A DNA stretch of 44,227 bases from Octopus bimaculoides (taxonomy: Eukaryota), in NCBI RefSeq assembly GCF_001194135.2, contig NC_068997.1, positions 35,661,525 to 35,705,751 on the forward strand. Direction: 5' to 3'. This document shows positions 330-32,214 of this stretch, piece by piece. The translations under genes and the position numbers were made by a program. The notes under the pieces were generated by a model. It was not told the DNA's origin and did not search any database. It saw only the letters and a program-made list of their open reading frames with translations. Numbering within the stretch: position 1 is the first letter of the stretch; each line of letters starts with the position of its first letter.

Positions 330-1830
330 ATATAACAGGACATGCGGCGCATAGCTTGCATGTCTGTGAGTGCATGCCACTGGCAAAAATTCCAAAGGTT
401 CATTCATGGCATTTTTGGTTATAAACAGACCATAGACTTCTAATAAAGTTATACGGAGCCAAGAAAGGAATCCCAATACAAACAGCAAACAGACTGCAGT
501 AGTGGGGTACCATTCTATTAAACTACAATTATAGAATGGAATATCTGCCTTCAAAAAAGTTGGGACAGACTGGTGGTCTGTCTAGGCTAATTTCAAGAAA
601 TAACGAACTGGTGGAAGAAACTGTAATAGCAGTGCTAAGAGCAGAGACAGAAACAAAAAAAGTGATGTGGAACATCATGCGTGAACTACCAGTAATTTTG
701 GAAGAAATAAAAAGAAATGCAAGATTTGACAAATTTATTAATGAGACAAAAAGAAAATTGTGGTTGACAAAAGGAAATAAAGAAAGATCTGATGCAAAGA
801 ACCACCAAGATGTGAACGTGTGCTCTATATGTGATGGTGTATTAATGTACGCTCAGAGGGTGGTCATACCACAGACGTTAGAGAAGAGAATGCTAAAAGA
901 ATTCCATGTGGGACATCCAGGCATCTCTAGAATGAAAGTGCTGACACAAAGTTTCGTATACTGGCCAAGCATAGACAAGGAAGTTCAAAACCTGGTAAAA
1001 GGCTGCAGAGGATGTGTACTGGCAGCGAAACTACCTACTACAAAATGTGAACCTAGGCCGGAAGTGAAAAAACCATGGTCCTGATTGCATATCGATTCTG
1101 CAGGTCTGGTAAATGGATAATATTACTTAATAACAGTGGACAACTATACAAAATGGTCTGAGGTATTGAGGTGTAAATGACTAACCTCATATACCATAAT
1201 AAACTTCTTACATGAGCTGTTTGCAAGATTTGGTGTACTGGACATAATTGTTAACAGAACACAGTTTGTATCCTGTGAGATGTTCATGTTAGAACATAAA
1301 ACTGTAGCCCTATATCACCCTAGATTGAATGGAAGGGCTGAACAGTTCATTGACACTTTTAAGAGAGCTTTAAAGAAAGCTAATAAGGAAGCCACAGATG
1401 AGGTTGTGATCCAACAATTCTTCATATGCCAGAAGGAAGTTCACCAGCAGAATTAATGTTTGCAGAAAGGTGAAGTCAGTATTCGATAAACTATTACCAG
1501 TGAAGAAAAAAATATATGCTAGTAAAAACATGCCAAAATTCTCTAGAATCAGAGATAAGGTATATGTAAGAATGTACAAAAAAGGCAAGCAATATTGGGA
1601 AGGAGAAATTGTAACATACATAGGAAGAATGATGTATGGTGTAAGAAGCAGAAATGGAATGGAAAGGTGACATAGAAATCAGCTTAAGAAAAGGAACCAA
1701 GAGTAGAAATACTGATGGATTGGCTATATGACACTTTTCAGGTTCCAACACCATTACAAGAAGTTGAAACCACACATACAAGGAAAAGGAAATACACTGA
1801 ACTCCTAAAAGTAGACCCTAAGAAGAAAAG
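330..1830 (+). mobile_element. Gypsy/Ty3 LTR retrotransposon pol remnant (RNase H end, integrase), with stops and frameshifts
   Basis: Reads KFQRFIHG..TDH..GAKKGIPIQTANRLQ*WGTILLNYNYRMEYLPSKKLG (RNase H end). ORF 536-1084 has the integrase H2C2 finger EFHVGHPGISRMK..YWP..CRGC. Downstream PWS*LHIDSAG..VDNYTKWSEV and YHPRLNGRAEQFIDTFKRAL match the rve core. Confidence 0.9.
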
Positions 1831-1836
1831 TTATTG

Positions 1837-1837
<1 letters not shown>

Positions 1838-1891
<54 letters not shown>
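1838..1891. repeat. (TA)n microsatellite
   Basis: Uninterrupted TA dinucleotide run. Confidence 0.97.
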
Positions 1892-1895
<4 letters not shown>

Positions 1896-1937
1896 AGGAG
1901 GGGTGAATAAAAAAAATGATTGTTAACTATTAAAATT

Positions 1938-21391: not shown

Positions 21392-21628
21392 GGCAGCGAG
21401 CTGGCAGAAATGTTAGCACATCGGGCAAAATGTTTAGCAGTATTTTGTCTGTCTTTACGTTCTGAGTTCAAATTCCGCCAAGGTTGACTTTGCCTTTCAT
21501 CCTTTTGGGGTCGATTAAATAAGAACCAGTTACGCACTGGGGTCGATGTAATCAACTTAATCTTTTTGTCTGTCCTTGTTTGTCCCCTCTATGTTTAGCC
21601 CCTTGTGGGCAATAAAGAAATAAGAAAC
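21392..21628 (+). mobile_element. tRNA-derived SINE, complete
   Basis: Head ggcagcgagctggcagaaatgttagc, B box gagttcaaattcc, central gcctttcatccttttggggtcgat (resembles the Meta-SINE domain as recalled) and an A-rich tail. Confidence 0.8.
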
Positions 21629-23955
21629 ATTAGCACGCTGGTTGAAATGCTTAGTAGTATTTCATCTGTTTTTACATTCTGAGTTTGTAGTGAAACCACC
21701 TCTCTCACGGTTATTTATTTACAAATGCGAACGTAGCAGGGAACAACTCTTTCCCGCCTTGCTGTGTCATCACCTGACTGACTTTTATTTTCGCGGCATT
21801 TACCTCCAGTCTGTTCGCGCCAGGACGCAAACCGACCAACCGTAGCCACTAATAAGGTCACGTGAGAGAGTGTTTTTCTGATGCTCTCTGGAGCCTCCTT
21901 GTACCTATAAATAGCCTAAATTATCCGCGCCGATTTGTCGCGGCTACAGATCTTCTAAGATCTGGTCGTAGACCACACAGCACCAACCAACCAGCCAGTT
22001 CCAGCGACATCAACAGCATCGTTCAACTACNNNNNNNNNNNNNNNNNNNNNNNNNNNNNNNNNNNNNNNNNNNNNNNNNNNNNNNNNNNNNNNNNNNNNN
22101 NNNNNNNNNNNNNNNNNNNNNNNNNNNNNNNNNNNNNNNNNNNNNNNNNNNNNNNNNNNNNNNNNNNNNNNNNNNNNNNNNNNNNNNNNNNNNNNNNNNN
22201 NNNNNNNNNNNNNNNNNNNNNNNNNNNNNNNNNNNNNNNNNNNNNNNNNNNNNNNNNNNNNNNNNNNNNNNNNNNNNNNNNNNNNNNNNNNNNNNNNNNN
22301 NNNNNNNNNNNNNNNNNNNNNNNNNNNNNNNNNNNNNNNNNNNTCTGTATCTCTTGCATTCACATACATATATTTGTATACACACTCTTCTGTTTACATG
22401 ACGGCCTGTCTTATATTGTGTTTTAATATGTCGCCTTCACACTCACACACAGACATACAGTTTAATGCTCCAATAAATCTTACTGTTATTCATCTTTATC
22501 GGTTGCATTTCTATCCTTACCTTACTGGCACTCCTTCGCATTTCACATGCGAATTCTCTATGTTATAGTATTATAACATAATATCATTATATTTTGTGTC
22601 GAGCGTGTGACGCGTTAAAAAGGAGCCTGTTTTCCATTCGTCACCATTTCTCCTTTGATTCGCACGGTCATTCTACAAACTGGTGACCCCGACGTGATTC
22701 TGTTCACACAGCTTCACTTAAATGGTGACTAAATGCCAGCGATAGGACCAACCGTTCTTTCAATTTTTTCACTACTATTATTTCCTGTTTCGTCCGTTTG
22801 TCGTTGACAAACCGACTGGTGCGAGGCTAATGTAGTGAAACCACCTCTCTCACTGTTATATATTTACAAATGCGAACGTAGCAGGAAACAACTCTTTCCC
22901 GCCTTGCTGTGTCATCACCTGACTGACTTTTATTTTCCCGGCATTTGCCTCCAGTCCGTTCGCGCCAGGACGCAAACCGACCAACCGTAGCCACTAATAA
23001 GGTCACATGAGAGAGTGTTTTTCTGATGGTTTCTGGAGCCTCCTTGTACCTATAAATAGCCTAAATTATCCGCGCCAATTCGTCGCGGCTTCAGATCCTC
23101 ACAGATCTGGTCGTTGACCACACACGTAACACAGCCAGCCAGTTTCCAGCGACGACATCAACAGCATCGTTCAACTACGTACTACAAGCATCGTCGCCAA
23201 CGTCAACATGATTTCTCCACGTACACAAGCAACTGCAGCTTCTCTTCTCAACCCTGTTTGTGTGAATCGCCTCACCACGAAATTAACAGCCAGAACTCAA
23301 CCTGCGAAGAACATCTATATCAAGAATCTGGCCCGGCATTGAAGCCTCAACTGCACAACAAGTAACTTAGCTCTGCCTCAACCTAAACCTCTTATATACA
23401 GACAATCTAACTACTGTGTACCTTAACAGAACTGGTATATTCTTATCCGTGTTACTGACTCTTATCTATACTCTGTATCTCTTGCATTCACATACATATA
23501 TTTGTACACATACACTATTTTGTTTACATGACGGCCTGTCTTATATTGTGTTTTATTATGTCGCATTCACACTCACACACAGACATACAGTTTAATGCTC
23601 CAATAAATCTTACTGTTATTCATCTTTACCGGTTGCGTCTCTATCTCTTCCTTACTGGCACTTCTTCGCATTTCACATGCGAATTCTCTATGTTATAGTA
23701 TTTTAACATATCTCATATATTTTGTGTCGACCGTGCGACGCGTTAAAAGGAGCCTGTTTTCCATTCGTCACCATTTCTCCTTTGGTTCGCACGGTCGTTC
23801 TACAAGTTCAAATTCCGCCAAGGTTGACTTTGCTTTTCATCCTTTTGGGGTCGATAAATTAAGTACCAGTTGTGTACTGGGTTGATCTAATCAACTGCCC
23901 CCCTCCCCGCTACCCAAAAATTTCAGAGCTTGTGCCTAGAGTGGAAAAGAACATT
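21625..23955 (+). mobile_element. Second SINE of the same family, split at its B box by the miniature LTR element
   Basis: ...ttacattctgAGTT at 21685 continues as AGTTcaaattccgccaaggttgactttgc...tcatccttttggggtcgataaattaagtaccag from 23805. Confidence 0.85.
21686..23804 (+). mobile_element. Non-autonomous miniature LTR retroelement (TRIM-like): LTR1 21686-22677, internal 22678-22830, LTR2 22831-23804
   Basis: Both LTRs run TGTAG...CTACA. PBS TGGTGACCCCGACGTGAT at 22681-22698 is complementary to the tRNA-Trp 3' end. TSD AGTT at 21682-85 and 23805-08. Each LTR has TATAAATA and AATAAA. The PPT is weak (ggtgcgaggctaa). Confidence 0.88.
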
Positions 23956-24296
23956 GTCATATCTCAAAGGCAAGAAGCATGCTGTAGAAGTTTTTGGACA
24001 GTTACCGATGATATGGCCGATATTGTCTATATTGGTATGGTATAATCAAGACTTTCAATCAGAATGTGAAGGCTTAGAGGCGTCCATATCTCTTTTGTTG
24101 ATCAGGTAATTAGTAACTATCTCCTGTTCTTGCATAGCAAAAGCATAGTGTTCTAGATGAGATGTGATGTATTATTGCCAGTCCAAGAGAGGTTACTATT
24201 TCTGTCAATTTTCCTGGCATTCTCCAGTCTACTGTACATGTGACCATGCATATCTTTCTGCTGGTATGATGAATATTTCTCTTAGAAATATTAGTA

Positions 24297-25640
24297 CGAG
24301 GGGGTACTCAAAAGTAATCGAAAACGTTCTCTGTGAGGTAAGCCAGTTGTAGCTCAGATTTTCACTGCTAGAAACCACTTGATGTGATCCACAGGTATCA
24401 GTCTGCCAAATGGTAGCACCAGCTGGAGTTGTACTGCCGCATGATGCATCTTTGTTTTGCGGTGCCTCTCCCTGATTTGTCGATTTTTGCAATGGCTGAA
24501 AGGAAGGAACAGTATGCTTCTGTGAAATTCTGTTTTCTGCGGGGAAAATGGCAGCCAAAACAATTGTCATGCTTCAGACAGTTTACAAGGACACTGCCAT
24601 GAACAAAACACAAGTTTATGAGTGGTTTTCACACTTTAAGAATGGTCAATTGTTGCTTGAAGACCAACCTTGTTCAGGGCAATCATCAATCTCCTGAACA
24701 AATGAGAATATCATGGAAATTCATGAACTGATCTTGGAGGACCATTGCCAAACAGTTGATGAACTTGTTGACATGACTGGTATGTCCTGGAGCTCTTGCC
24801 AATAGATTCTGAGTGAGAAATTGCAATGAAAAGAATTGCAGCAAAATTTGTGCCTTGCTTGCTCACAGAAGATCAAAAGCAGTCACAACTGAATGCATGT
24901 TGTGAAATGAAATAATAGTTGGAAGTTGATCTAGACATTTTTCAAAAGTCATCACTGATGATGAAAACTGGTGCTATGGCTATGACCCGGAAACGAAACA
25001 GCAATGAAATCAATGGAAGCATTCAATGTCACCACACCCCACAAAACAAGTGTCAAGTGAAAACAATGCTGATTTGTTTCATTGATACAAAAGAAATTGT
25101 CTACACAGAATGTGTTCCTCCTGGTCAAACTGTTAACCAAACATTTTACTTGGAAGTTCTTAAGTGTTTGTGAAATGCGGTGAGACAAAAATGCCTCAAC
25201 CTATGACAAAGTGGAGAGTGGTGGTTTCATCATGACAATGTACCTTCACACACCGCCTTAAGCATGAGACAGTTTTTCACCCAAAATGGCATGACCCCCC
25301 CNNNNNNNNNNNNNNNNNNNNNNNNNNNNNNNNNNNNNNNNNNNNNNCCCCCCCATTCACCAAGTCTTGCTCACTGCAACTTTTTTTTGTTCCGTAAATG
25401 AAAAAAGTCCTTGAAGGAAAATGTTTTACAGATATGGAAGAGATGAAGAAAAAAACAGAGGCATTAAGAAACATCACCTTGCAAGAGTTCCAGGACTGCT
25501 CTGAACAGTGGAAAATGTATCTGGACTTACGCATTGCTTCAAATAAACAATACTTTGAAGGTGATAAAAGTGTAAGCATGTAAAAGTAAGTGAACAAAAC
25601 AATATTGCAAAGTTCTGGTTTCTTTTGAGTACCCACCTCA
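24297..25640 (+). mobile_element. Full-length degenerate mariner element
   Basis: TIRs cgagggggtactcaaaag and cttttgagtacccacctca, flanked by TA on both sides. Transposase remnants VYEWF..FKNG, AKFVPCLL, DENWCYGYDPETKQQ and FHHDN. Confidence 0.92.
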
Positions 25641-28787: not shown

Positions 28788-29265
28788 CGTGGGCAATTAT
28801 GGAGTGAATTTTAGAACTTATAAATCTAATATTTTCCTATCCTTCCTTAATACCAGTTCCCATATGCTATTCATATCTGCACTTGGTCTGCTTAGGAGGT
28901 TGTTGTGTCCTAACATATGTGCTGCTTCTTTTAGTTTTCATCTTTTCCAGTGGTGTTCTCCATCTATAATTTTAACTTCATCCCACAGGAGGAGGTGGTC
29001 TCCATTTTTCCATTCATGATCAGCTATACCCGATTTATCAATATCTCCTTGTGTCACAGCTTTGCGATGTTCGTTTACCCTTATTTTGAAGGGGTGACAT
29101 GTTTTGCCTTTGTATAACCTACCACAGCTGCATGGGATGGAGTACATGCAGTCTTTGGTCATATTCTCTTCTATTGGTGGTTTTACTCGAAGGAGATATT
29201 TGCGAAGTGTTATATTACTCTTGAATACTGTCCTGATGTCATATGGGCTGCATATCTTTTGTATC

Positions 29266-30289
29266 TGTGGCGTATGCCTTAAGGGATGCTTCTCTCTCTC
29301 TCTCTGTTATATATACATGGATACAGATGTAGTGGATAACAGCTAGCCTTCGGCCGCACTTTTAGACCGTTGTGTCCACCACTCTGATTGGTTGGTATTG
29401 TCTCGCATTTTGTCTCTTGTTCTATTGCACACCAAGATGCAACCCAACCAATCGCAGCCTTCAGATAAGGTCGCATGAGACAGTCTTTTCTGAACGCCAG
29501 TTGAACCGAAAGAATGATATAAATAGCTAGCCTCTCACCGTCACAGTTTGTTAGTCTTGTCAGCTCTAGACCTTCTGAGGTCTAGCCACTGACCACAGAG
29601 AACACAGCCAGTTCCAGCGACGACAACAACAGCCACATGGAGACTCAACACTCAACCAGCAGCTTACGGCAAACTCCATCTATGTCACCTCCAGCTTCTT
29701 AGCGTCATCATCAACTTCTCAACGTACACATCACCAACAGCACTCGTACAGCTTCTCTCAACACTGTTTGTGAATTACTTCACCATGGTTAACAGCGAAT
29801 ACAACCTGCGAGAATTCCTGTACCAAGTAACCGGCAGCAGCATTGAAGCCACAACCTTTCACAACATGTGCCTTTCCCCAGCTCTGCTACACGGCCTCAA
29901 CTTCTTGTTACAGTACTTCAACCACAGTGTACCTTGGATACGAACTGGTATTTTATCATCCTTATGTCTGGACTTTCTTCTAACATCCTTATAGACTCTT
30001 TTCTATGCTCTGTACTTATCGCACATGCATACATCGATGTTTGTATAAACATACACTTTGTTTACATGACGGCCTGTCTATTATTATGTTTATGTCGAAC
30101 TCACACACACAGACATACATGTTGACATATCAATAAAACCTTCTCTTAAACCTTTTACTGGTTGTGTCTCTCTTTTCCTTTTGGCACTTATACTCATTTA
30201 TCCTCTTTTCATATTTTTATTTGTATCAACCGTGCGATGTACTAAAGGAGCCATTCCTTGTCACCTCTCCTGATTGCATGGTCATTACA
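29266..30289 (+). mobile_element. Solo LTR (1024 bp) inserted in the Penelope ORF, related to the miniature-element LTRs
   Basis: TG..CA ends and TSD TATC at 29262-65 and 30290-93. Removing it restores the Penelope reading across the junction. Shares blocks (tataaatagc, cagccagttccagcgac, tttgtttacatgacggcctgtct, aaaggagcc) with 22831-23804. Confidence 0.82.
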
Positions 30290-32214
30290 TATCTTTTCAA
30301 AGAGGCCTTTCACATAGGGTAGACAAACTGTGGACAGTTTATTGGTTTCATCCTCTCTTTTCTTCATAATTGGAGTGGATAGTATGTTTTTAGGGCAGTT
30401 GTTACTTAATAGACTGTTACTTAGCTTGATCATTTCTTCGTGGTGGGTATCATGATCACTACTTATATTCGTTGCTCAATGTTTTGGGCACTGAGCAATC
30501 CCTCTCTTTACACTGTATGGATGGTGGGAATTGAAATTGAGGTATCGTTTAGTGAAGGTTGGTTTGTGGTATACGGATGTCCTGAATCCATACTTGGTGC
30601 GTGTTATTGATATGTCCAGAAATGTTAGCTGATTGTCTTTTACCTTTTCCATTGTGAATTGTATGGATGGCTTTACTGAGTTCACATGATCTAACAGCAC
30701 TTGGACATCTTCCTGGTAGGGCCAGAGTATAACGGTGTCATCAACATATTGCAGCCATAGGGATGGTTTTAGTGGTGCTGATCCTAAAGCCAAATTCTCA
30801 AAGTATTCTATGCATATATTGGCTATTATTGGTGATAATGGCGAACCCATAGCTAAACTGTCTTCTTGTTTATTTATATCAGTGCCCATACTGAAGTAGG
30901 TAGTTTCTACACAGAAGGTCAACATTTCCATCAAGTTTCTTATTGGTATACTAGTGCGTTCTTTTAGATGGGTGTCTATCAATAGTTTTTCTTGAATCAC
31001 CAATAGTGCTTCACCAGTTGGGACACATCTAGACTCCCCACCTGGTTGGATTCAATGGGGGTATCCTTGATCAATTCTGTGAAGTAGGTGGAATGTTGAC
31101 TTCCCTGCTAATGGACTGTTTATGTCCACAAGGAAGCGGCTCAGTGGATGACATGCTGAACCTCTACAGCTCACTATAGGTCTTAATGGAATACCATCCT
31201 AGTGAATCTTAGGGAGACCGTACATGTGTGGTAGTTTACTGTAGTGTTGAGTCAGTTGTCTGTACTTCATTGGTGTAAAGTGATCCTTGTTCTTGATCAA
31301 GATCTGACAACTTCCTCTCTGTTTTCAGAATTGGGTCTTTCTTTTCTTTGCTGTAGCTACCATCACTTATAAGACTTGCCAATTTTTCAGAGTAGTCAGA
31401 CTTGTTCATCACCACTGTAGCATTTCCCTTGTCTGCTGGAAGTATTATGATGGAACTGTCACTTTGTAGTCTTTTGATAGCGAACTTTTCTTCCTTAGTG
31501 ATGTTTGGTTTGGGAAGTTTCACTTTTTCTAGTACCTTATCACCTTAATTCATCTCCCTGAGCTTCTGGTAGCTTTATGGCTATCTCTTCAATAGGGGCT
31601 ATTATGTCCAAGTATGGAATGCGCTTGTTGGTTGTCGCAAAGTTGAGACCTTTGTTTAGTACTGCTTCTTCAGAGCTTTTAGATGTCGGCTACTTACATT
31701 AATTACTGCTTTCACAGGTGGGTGATGGATTTCAGTCTTCATTCTCTGACCTTTGAGCTTCATAAACTTCTTCACCATTTCAAATTCTTTCATGTAAGAC
31801 TTTTCTAGATCTTGTTGGATTCTCTTTCTATCATCATCTCTGGTAACTTTCCTAAGTAATGAAGATAACCTCCCTTTGATTTCGTTATTCAGTTGACGTT
31901 TTTTCTAATGGTTGTAAGGATCCTCTCACAGACGAGGCCATGTCCTGCCCTATCTGCTACTCTTCTAGCTTTATATGAATCCACTGGTGCCATTATATTC
32001 AAGTCGGGTGGTACTAGCTTTGAGTCTCTACATCTACACAGGAAAGTTAGATGGTTTGAAAGACAAGCTAGTTTTTGATGGAGTTTCTCTATGTCTCCAT
32101 TTAGTCTAATGTCGGTTGTATACCAATTAGATAATACAGTTCCATATTTAAGAGATGAGGAATTATGTACATTATTTACATTTGACAGATATTTGTCCTC
32201 ATCTTGTTTGTTGC

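What the first reader, a model, noticed from the sequence alone, without database searches (positions are those of the whole stretch)
21682..23808. Miniature LTR retroelement with ~1-kb LTRs, tRNA-Trp primer site and only 153 bp of internal sequence
Seen: AGTT-[TGTAG..CTACA]-aac-TGGTGACCCCGACGTGAT-about 130 bp non-coding-weak PPT-[TGTAG..CTACA]-AGTT. The 18-nt PBS is the exact complement of the eukaryotic tRNA-Trp(CCA) 3' end, and the 4-bp TSD fits a Gypsy-type integrase. The LTR1-internal-LTR2 junctions are gap-free. The N gap in LTR1 (313 nt) roughly matches the missing LTR segment. Established: TRIMs have this layout but usually much shorter terminal repeats. Inference: this is a non-autonomous, trans-mobilised LTR family that may be undescribed in cephalopods. 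The LTR differences are clustered, which hints at recombination between sibling templates.
Basis: partly seen in the sequence, partly recalled or inferred. Interest (0 to 1): 0.7.

Follow-up and report, generated by a model that had tools for sequence, protein, structure and literature searches.

The report
Non-coding mini LTR retroelement in octopus
This is a real but old and ordinary insertion of a gene-less LTR retrotransposon into a SINE copy in an octopus genome. Whether it belongs to a multiplying "miniature" family or is a one-off deleted copy could not be tested with the data within reach.

Summary
The structure is there exactly as described: AGTT, LTR1 (21686-22677, 313 N inside), AAC, an 18-nt tRNA-Trp primer site, 132 more non-coding bases, LTR2 (22831-23804), AGTT.

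- **Insertion:** An intact neighbouring copy of the target SINE-like repeat serves as an empty site. It shows a clean insertion with a 4-bp duplication.
- **Assembly gap:** Both sides of the gap align in order to LTR2, and 293 nt are missing against 313 N.
- **Age:** The LTRs differ by 5.2% (K2P), so the copy is roughly 7 million years old.
- **Coding:** Nothing in it encodes a protein.
- **Transcription signals:** Each LTR has a TATA box and one AATAAA. A 70%-identical solo LTR of a sister family at 29260-30289 conserves both.
- **Host:** An Octopus, with best matches to O. bimaculoides.

It is therefore a genuine LTR retroelement that cannot move on its own.

- It fails the TRIM size criteria (under 1 kb in total, 100-250-bp repeats).
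- The "clustered differences, hence recombination" claim rests on one marginal 60-nt patch next to a contig end.
- Copy number and an autonomous partner could not be checked. No searchable collection held octopus DNA, and a SINE control also found nothing.

Interest is low.

The parts
21682..21685 (+). Left copy of the 4-bp target-site duplication AGTT
   Evidence: The intact paralogous repeat reads CTGAGTTCAAATT with a single AGTT.
21686..22677 (+). 5' LTR (LTR1), TGTAG..CTACA. It contains the assembly gap 22031-22343 (313 N).
   Evidence: Positions 21686-22030 align to LTR2 1-348, and 22344-22677 align to LTR2 642-974.
21906..21913 (+). TATAAATA box in LTR1 (inferred Pol II promoter near the end of U3)
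   Evidence: The same motif is in LTR2 (23051) and in the sister LTR (29518).
22472..22477 (+). The only AATAAA in LTR1 (inferred polyadenylation signal near the R/U5 border)
   Evidence: It is conserved in LTR2 (23602) and in the sister LTR (30132).
22681..22698 (+). Primer-binding site TGGTGACCCCGACGTGAT, 3 nt (AAC) after the LTR end
   Evidence: unique in the window, 0.01 expected by chance. (listed as the complement of tRNA-Trp in PMC4635179).
22678..22830 (+). Internal region of 153 bp, non-coding, with no similarity elsewhere in the window
22818..22830 (+). Weak polypurine-tract candidate GGTGCGAGGCTAA (9 of 13 purines) abutting LTR2
   Evidence: Read directly from the sequence. Function is inferred from position only.
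22831..23804 (+). 3' LTR (LTR2), 974 nt, TGTAG..CTACA, complete. TATAAATA at 23051 and AATAAA at 23602.
23805..23808 (+). Right copy of the target-site duplication AGTT
21623..21685 (+). Left half of the SINE-like repeat that was hit by the insertion
   Evidence: (family D5).
23805..23896 (+). Right half of the interrupted SINE-like repeat
   Evidence: (family D3). A copy also occurs in the O. sinensis locus L003.
21406..21557 (+). Intact neighbouring copy of the same SINE-like repeat, which serves as the empty-site reference
29260..30289 (+). Solo LTR of a sister family (1030 bp, TGTAT..TTACA, about 70% identical to LTR2). It lies inside a Penelope-like element and is flanked by TATCTTT on both sides.

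Best explanation
This is a genuine integrated copy of an LTR retroelement with no genes: two ~975-nt LTRs around 153 bp.

**Proposed life cycle (inferred)**
1. Pol II starts about 30 nt after the TATA box in the 5' LTR and polyadenylates after the AATAAA in the 3' LTR.
2. This gives a ~1.7-kb RNA of the form R-U5-PBS-132 nt-U3-R. By this reading U3 is about 250 nt, R about 545 nt and U5 about 180 nt.
3. The RNA is packaged into particles made by an autonomous LTR element of the same lineage.
4. Host tRNA-Trp anneals to the 18-nt PBS and primes minus-strand synthesis.
5. Plus-strand synthesis starts at the purine-poor tract next to the 3' LTR.
6. The partner's integrase joins the TG..CA ends into the target with a 4-bp stagger, giving AGTT on each side.

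The target was a SINE-like repeat in an Octopus genome.

**What I commit to.** The copy was already short when it integrated, so it was mobilised in trans. It has since aged about 7 million years and is probably dead.

**Shown:** the LTR pair, the TSD, the empty site, the PBS identity, the absence of coding capacity, and the LTR divergence.

**Inferred:** the U3/R/U5 borders, trans-mobilisation, the kind of partner, and that the shortening came before integration.
For: - **LTRs:** Collinear LTR pair at 94.9% identity.
- **Insertion:** Perfect 4-bp TSD, and the interrupted repeat is restored when the element is removed.
- **PBS:** An exact 18-nt tRNA-Trp complement 3 nt after the LTR.
- **Transcription signals:** One TATAAATA and one AATAAA per LTR, both kept in a 70%-identical sister LTR.
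- **No coding:** No ORF over 101 codons, and no protein similarity in six frames.
- **Contiguity:** The LTR1 3' part, the internal region and LTR2 lie in one gap-free contig.
- **Shape:** The internal region keeps exactly what reverse transcription needs in cis (a PBS at one edge, a tract next to the 3' LTR) and little else. That is the normal shape of non-autonomous LTR elements (PMC6934838; PMC10886601). A random later deletion would rarely produce it.
- **Lineage:** A second LTR of the same lineage 5.5 kb away shows the lineage is not rare in this genome.
Against: - No second copy with the same internal region was seen. None could be looked for outside the 44-kb window.
- No autonomous partner with this LTR or PBS was found in the window or in the three fetched loci.
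- The polypurine tract is poor (9 of 13 purines). A well-adapted, repeatedly mobilised family might be expected to keep a better one.
- The locus lies in a short-read scaffold with a gap inside LTR1.
Confidence: 0.5

Rival explanations
1. This is a one-off deletion after insertion. A full-length, autonomous LTR retrotransposon integrated here. Illegitimate recombination later removed almost all of its internal region, leaving 153 bp. No mini family exists.
For: - The copy is old (K2P 0.052), so there was time for deletions.
- The PPT is poor, as if the true PPT-bearing end might be partly gone.
- No other copy of the internal region is in the window.
- Internally deleted LTR elements are common in genomes (established knowledge).
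Against: - Both breakpoints would have to fall within about 130 nt of the LTR edges without touching either LTR or the 18-nt PBS. For a random deletion in a region of several kb this is unlikely.
- The TG..CA ends of both LTRs and the TSD are untouched.
Confidence: 0.3
2. This is an assembly artefact. The true locus holds a full internal region or a third LTR. It is hidden either in the N gap, whose length is only an estimate, or by a chimeric join inside the 22344-25301 contig.
For: - The scaffold comes from short reads and has seven N gaps in 44 kb. One of them is inside LTR1.
- Repeats of this kind are where assemblers fail.
- The only patch of dense LTR1/LTR2 differences lies next to the contig end.
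Against: - The gap edges align in order to LTR2, and the missing 293 nt fit the 313 N.
- The two parts of LTR1 are about equally diverged from LTR2 (5.5% and 4.5%), as expected for one LTR.
- The two flanks are halves of one SINE copy, so the scaffold join is right.
- The PBS, the internal region and LTR2 are in continuous sequence.
Confidence: 0.1
3. The LTR differences reflect recombination or gene conversion with sibling copies rather than plain ageing.
For: One 60-nt window (21932-21990) holds 10 of the 34 substitutions and most of the indels in the 5' part (p about 0.02).
Against: - The index of dispersion over 50-nt bins is only 1.3. The rest is evenly spread, with 7 CpG transitions typical of ordinary decay.
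- The patch is within 100 nt of a contig end.
- The same stretch is also the least conserved, indel-rich part in the comparison with the sister LTR.
- Template mixing during reverse transcription does not make the two LTRs of one copy differ (established knowledge).
Confidence: 0.1

Closest known systems
TRIM (terminal-repeat retrotransposons in miniature). Animal examples include biv-TRIM of bivalves and the Helenus elements.
   Same: - Layout: two direct terminal repeats, an internal domain that starts with a tRNA-complementary PBS and ends next to the 3' repeat, no genes, and a TSD.
- Animal Helenus elements also give 4-bp TSDs (PMC10886601).
- Dependence on an autonomous partner is presumed.
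   Different: - TRIMs are defined as under 1000 bp with 100-250-bp repeats. Here the repeats are ~975 nt and the whole is ~2.1 kb.
- The LTRs carry a Pol II-type TATA box and AATAAA. No tRNA- or 5S-derived part was found.
- Family status is not shown.
LARD (large retrotransposon derivatives of plants; from my own knowledge)
   Same: Gene-less LTR elements with full-size LTRs, mobilised in trans.
   Different: LARDs are several kb long with a long conserved non-coding internal domain. Here the internal region is only 153 bp.
Internally deleted or non-autonomous derivatives of autonomous LTR elements, such as mouse ETn relative to MusD (from my own knowledge)
   Same: Partner-type LTRs, PBS and PPT are kept while the coding region is lost. 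Movement uses the partner's proteins.
   Different: Those keep kilobases of internal sequence, and their partners are known. Here almost nothing is kept and no partner is known.
Ty3/gypsy-type (Metaviridae) LTR retrotransposons of Octopus
   Same: - TG..CA ends and a 4-bp TSD.
- Ty3-like elements are the main recently active LTR group reported in O. vulgaris: 9 families with 147 insertions (PMC13282606).
   Different: No gag or pol is present, so the superfamily cannot be assigned. BEL/Pao, Copia or retrovirus-like partners are not excluded.
Avian leukosis-type retroviruses (primer choice only)
   Same: The identical 18-nt PBS complementary to tRNA-Trp (PMC4635179; PMC5029493).
   Different: Only the primer choice is shared. 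The host, LTR sequence and structure are unrelated, so this implies no relationship.

Membership tests
LTR retrotransposon (structural definition) | Two long direct terminal repeats ending in TG..CA | tested here: met
   LTR1 and LTR2 are 94.9% identical, with TGTAG..CTACA ends.
LTR retrotransposon (structural definition) | Target-site duplication of 4-6 bp, shown against an empty site | tested here: met
   AGTT on both sides. An intact paralogous repeat has a single AGTT, and the junction aligns without a gap.
LTR retrotransposon (structural definition) | PBS complementary to a tRNA 3' end just after the 5' LTR | tested here: met
   An 18/18 match to the published tRNA-Trp complement, 3 nt after the LTR. 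The host's own tRNA-Trp gene was not available. None is in the window or the fetched loci.
LTR retrotransposon (structural definition) | Polypurine tract just before the 3' LTR | tested here: inconclusive
   GGTGCGAGGCTAA has only 9 of 13 purines.
TRIM | Total length under 1000 bp | tested here: not met
   2,119 positions as assembled, or about 2,100 if the gap is 293 nt. Definition.
TRIM | Terminal repeats of 100-250 bp | tested here: not met
   LTR2 is 974 nt. Definition.
TRIM | No coding capacity | tested here: met
   The longest stop-free stretch is 101 codons. Neither the six-frame query nor the 83-aa ORF found a homologue. The ORFs are not conserved in the sister LTR.
TRIM / non-autonomous LTR family | Many copies with the same internal domain at different sites with different TSDs | not testable with these tools
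   There is no second copy in the window. The collections hold no octopus DNA: a SINE control gave 0 hits, and the LTR 21-mer gave 0 hits.
TRIM / non-autonomous LTR family | An autonomous partner with related LTRs and the same PBS | not testable with these tools
   None in the window or in loci L001-L003. The decayed integrase at 536-1900 has no associated LTR of this type.
TRIMp3 (Cassandra, Helenus, Ajax) | tRNA- or 5S-derived Pol III promoter inside the LTR | tested here: not met
   No tRNA by ARAGORN and no Rfam family in the window. The LTR has TATAAATA and AATAAA instead.
LARD | Long (kb-scale) non-coding internal domain | tested here: not met
   The internal region is 153 bp.
Ty3/gypsy (Metaviridae) | Pol with RT-RNase H-IN order and RT phylogeny | not testable with these tools
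   The element has no pol. A 4-bp TSD is compatible with this family but not specific to it.
Troyka | CG..CG termini and a 3-bp TSD | tested here: not met
   The termini are TG..CA and the TSD is 4 bp.

The most novel reading that the evidence does not exclude
The element is one member of an undescribed octopus family of gene-less LTR retroelements with full-size (~1 kb) LTRs and a minimal 153-bp core. It would be primed by tRNA-Trp and copied in trans by a Ty3-like partner. All cis signals for packaging would then have to lie in the long R-U5 region plus about 130 nt of leader.
Probability: 0.4. Interest if true: 0.3.

Novelty: new member of a known kind. Interest (0 to 1): 0.2.

Why it matters
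The stakes are modest.

- **If it is a family:** It would add a non-autonomous LTR group to cephalopod repeat libraries, where LTR elements are a small and little-curated fraction. It would also give a natural "minimal vector" showing which cis sequences an octopus LTR element needs to be copied.
- **If it is a one-off:** It is simply a well-preserved textbook example of an LTR insertion with its empty site next door.
- **Either way:** The locus is a useful test case for repeat annotation. LTR finders that expect kilobases of internal sequence, and TRIM finders that expect short repeats, would both miss it.

Tried and rejected
1. **ORF trick to reach other copies.** The 83-aa LTR ORF and a six-frame pseudo-protein of 22600-23808 found nothing among 5.8 billion proteins. 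Exact look-ups of 19 window ORFs were all absent. Raw ORFs of this genome are therefore not in that collection.
2. **DNA scans.** A 21/22-mer conserved in all three LTR copies found 0 hits in IMG/VR and 0 in JGI metagenomes. An octopus SINE core used as a control also found 0. These negatives therefore say nothing about copy number.
3. **Fishing for a partner.** The window's decayed integrase gave 33 hits. Loci were fetched from O. bimaculoides (L001), O. sinensis (L003) and an unrelated ENA assembly (L002). None held the LTR, the internal region or the PBS. Two further O. bimaculoides proteins had no contig on record.
4. **Small RNA genes.** tRNA and Rfam scans of the window were empty. This rejects a Pol III-type (Helenus or Cassandra-like) LTR.
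5. **Troyka.** Rejected on termini and TSD length.
6. **Tandem duplication of a solo LTR plus flank.** Rejected, because the internal region and the right flank are unrelated and the internal region starts with a true PBS.
7. **Conserved LTR-encoded protein.** Rejected, because the ATG and the frame are not kept in the sister LTR.
8. **Pfam on the translated element.** It was not repeated because one search already covered the question.

Full report
**Observation.**
- AGTT at 21682-21685 is followed by a repeat starting TGTAG at 21686 and ending CTACA at 22677.
- AAC follows, then TGGTGACCCCGACGTGAT (22681-22698).
- Another 132 nt follow, then a second repeat (22831-23804, 974 nt) with the same TGTAG..CTACA ends, then AGTT (23805-23808).
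- The internal region is 22678-22830, 153 bp.
- A BLAST of LTR2 against the window finds LTR1 in two collinear pieces on either side of the N run.

**The assembly gap.** This was tested first, as the scan's program asked.
- The left edge (up to 22030) aligns to LTR2 up to 23178.
- The right edge (from 22344) aligns to LTR2 from 23472.
- The order is kept and there is no overlap, so the gap replaces 293 nt of LTR and is written as 313 N.
- The two readable parts of LTR1 are similarly diverged from LTR2: 19 substitutions in 343 sites and 15 in 330.
- No reading frame crosses the gap, because nothing here codes.
- The stretch from the LTR1 3' part through the PBS, the internal region, LTR2 and the right flank up to 25301 is one uninterrupted contig.

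**Proof of insertion.** The element sits inside a ~150-nt SINE-like repeat, and an intact copy of that repeat lies just upstream (21406-21557). I removed the element and one AGTT by joining 21685 to 23809. The interrupted copy then aligns to the intact one without any gap at the junction (128/152 identical). The intact copy reads CTGAGTTCAAATT with a single AGTT. This is an in-window empty site. It shows that the two flanks belong together, so the scaffold join is right. It also shows that the two LTRs came in with one integration event that duplicated exactly 4 bp.

**Primer site.** The 18-mer is unique in the window. With up to three mismatches, 0.01 matches are expected by chance. The same 18-mer is listed as the complement of tRNA-Trp in a table of retroviral PBS primers (PMC4635179). 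It is also used as a PBS primer for chicken endogenous proviruses (PMC5029493). I could not obtain an octopus tRNA-Trp gene: none is in the window or in the fetched loci. An exact 18-nt match at the right distance from the LTR cannot be chance. From my own knowledge, tRNA-Trp is strongly conserved among animals. The polypurine tract is poor: GGTGCGAGGCTAA has 9 of 13 purines.

**LTR anatomy (inferred).**
- Each LTR has one TATAAATA (21906, 23051) and one AATAAA (22472, 23602).
- Both motifs are kept in a diverged relative at 29260-30289 (29518 and 30132). That relative is about 70% identical to LTR2 over 856 aligned positions.
- A 22-mer, TTGTTTACATGACGGCCTGTCT, is also kept in all three LTR copies.
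- Conservation across two families makes the TATA and poly(A) signals credible.
- They imply a U3 of about 250 nt, an unusually long R of about 545 nt and a U5 of about 180 nt. The transcript would be about 1.7 kb.

**No coding capacity.** The longest stop-free stretch in any frame is 101 codons. The 83-aa ORF in LTR2 has no homologue. A concatenated six-frame translation of 22600-23808 gave no hit at E of 0.01 or better. The ATG and the frame of that ORF are not kept in the sister LTR. ARAGORN and Rfam found no tRNA-like or other RNA family.

**Age and the "clustered differences".**
- LTR1 and LTR2 differ by 34 substitutions in 673 sites (19 transitions, 15 transversions, 7 of them CpG transitions). 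K2P is 0.052.
- The calibration used for Octopus repeats is a JC distance of 0.09 for 25 million years (PMC13282606). With it, K/2 per lineage gives roughly 7 million years.
- The differences are mostly evenly spread. The index of dispersion is 1.3.
- The exception is one 60-nt patch (21932-21990) with 10 substitutions (p about 0.02), plus several indels.
- That patch is within 100 nt of the contig end. It coincides with the least conserved, indel-rich stretch in the comparison with the sister LTR.
The two LTRs of a new copy are synthesised from the same strands, so mixed templates would not make them differ.

**Host and context.**
- The window is packed with decayed mobile elements: a Ty3/gypsy-type integrase at 536-1900, LINE fragments, a mariner transposase and a Penelope-like element.
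- The integrase's best named relatives are Octopus bimaculoides proteins at 70-71% identity, and O. sinensis at 49%.
- Repeats of the window match an O. bimaculoides chromosome locus at 70-96% identity.
- The target SINE-like repeat occurs in an O. sinensis locus at 80% identity.
- The cephalopod assignment is therefore supported.

**What it is.** It is a true LTR retroelement copy that cannot encode its own proteins. There are three ways to get there.
- **(a) It integrated as a short element and was copied in trans.** It could be a member of a non-autonomous family or a single born-deleted copy.
- **(b) A full-length element was deleted after insertion.**
- **(c) The assembly hides more sequence.**

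I favour (a) at about 0.5, for two reasons. What remains is precisely the cis set needed for reverse transcription, with both LTRs, both TG..CA ends, the TSD and all 18 PBS bases intact. A random later deletion would need both breakpoints within about 130 nt of the LTR edges.

Option (b) stays at about 0.3. The copy is old, the polypurine tract is poor, and internally deleted LTR elements are common.

Option (c) is about 0.1. The gap arithmetic, the equal divergence of the two LTR1 parts, the empty-site proof and the contiguous internal region all argue against it. Only long reads can close the question.

**Comparison with known kinds.**
- **TRIM:** The layout is that of a TRIM. However, published definitions require under 1000 bp in total and 100-250-bp repeats (PMC6934838; PMC10886601). 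This element fails both, so it should not be filed as a TRIM.
- **LARD:** It is not a LARD, because the internal domain is tiny.
- **Pol III-promoter TRIM:** Not one, because there is no small-RNA part.
- **Troyka:** Not one, because the ends are TG..CA and the TSD is 4 bp.
- **Superfamily:** It cannot be assigned without pol. A 4-bp TSD is compatible with Ty3/gypsy, the main recently active LTR group reported in O. vulgaris, but it does not identify it.
- **tRNA-Trp PBS:** The primer site shared with avian retroviruses is a shared primer choice only.

**What could not be done.** The decisive test is to count loci with the same internal region and find a partner. That needs a nucleotide search of an octopus genome, which no tool here allows.
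- The protein-based detours failed.
- The DNA scans of IMG/VR and JGI metagenomes were empty. A control with the very abundant octopus SINE was empty too, so these negatives carry no information.
- The three loci fetched through integrase homologues contained neither the LTR nor the PBS.

**Verdict.** The element is best described as a non-coding, TRIM-like but full-LTR retroelement copy, a new member of a known kind, and of low general interest.

Noticed in passing
window 29253-30296: A solo LTR of a sister family lies at 29260-30289 (1030 bp, TGTAT..TTACA, about 70% identical to LTR2). It is flanked by a 7-bp direct repeat, TATCTTT. That is longer than the 4 bp of the main element and longer than the usual 4-6 bp. 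Removing the LTR plus one repeat copy restores a single reading frame in the host element. The 7-bp length is unexplained.
   Followed up: partly
window ~28800-31600, minus strand: A decayed Penelope-like element is interrupted by that solo LTR. It has an RT ORF at 30476-31003 (Pfam RVT_1) and a GIY-YIG-like endonuclease motif (CMYSIPCSCGRLYKGKT...RVNEH) at about 28900-29200. After excision in silico, the frame reads ...CLPYVKGLFEKICSPYDIRTVFKS... across the junction.
   Followed up: partly
window 21406-21557, 21623-21685 and 23805-23896: Two adjacent copies of a ~150-nt SINE-like repeat are present, 84% identical to each other. The LTR element landed inside the B-box-like GTTCAAATTCC of the second copy. 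SINEs make up about 12% of an Octopus genome (PMC13282606), so one hit does not show a target preference.
   Followed up: partly
window 21906-22477 and 23051-23607; 29518-30137: The TATA box and the only AATAAA are 551 nt apart in the main LTR and 614 nt apart in the sister LTR. This implies an unusually long R region of about 0.55-0.6 kb, if these are the signals actually used. No transcript data were available.
   Followed up: no
window 536-1900, plus strand: A decayed Ty3/gypsy-type pol fragment has an integrase H2C2 zinc finger and an rve core with stops. It is 70-71% identical to Octopus bimaculoides proteins and 77% identical at the DNA level to an O. bimaculoides chromosome locus (L001 10589-12167). 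No LTR of the studied type lies next to it.
   Followed up: partly
window 22679-22685, 22725-22731 and 22814-22820: The motif (AC)TGGTG(A/C) occurs three times in the 153-bp internal region: at the start of the PBS, about 45 nt downstream, and in the tract next to LTR2 (ACTGGTGCGAGGC). It may be chance. No tRNA match was found for the last one.
   Followed up: no
window 22831-23804: LTR2 is not CpG-depleted (45 CpG, observed/expected 1.08), although 7 of the 34 LTR1/LTR2 substitutions are CpG transitions.
   Followed up: no
locus L002 (ENA ERZ21867824, ctg123002l): Many of the integrase homologues (45-51% identity) come from long contigs of ENA assemblies. The one fetched shares no repeat with the window, so it is not octopus. 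Its organism is unknown.
   Followed up: no
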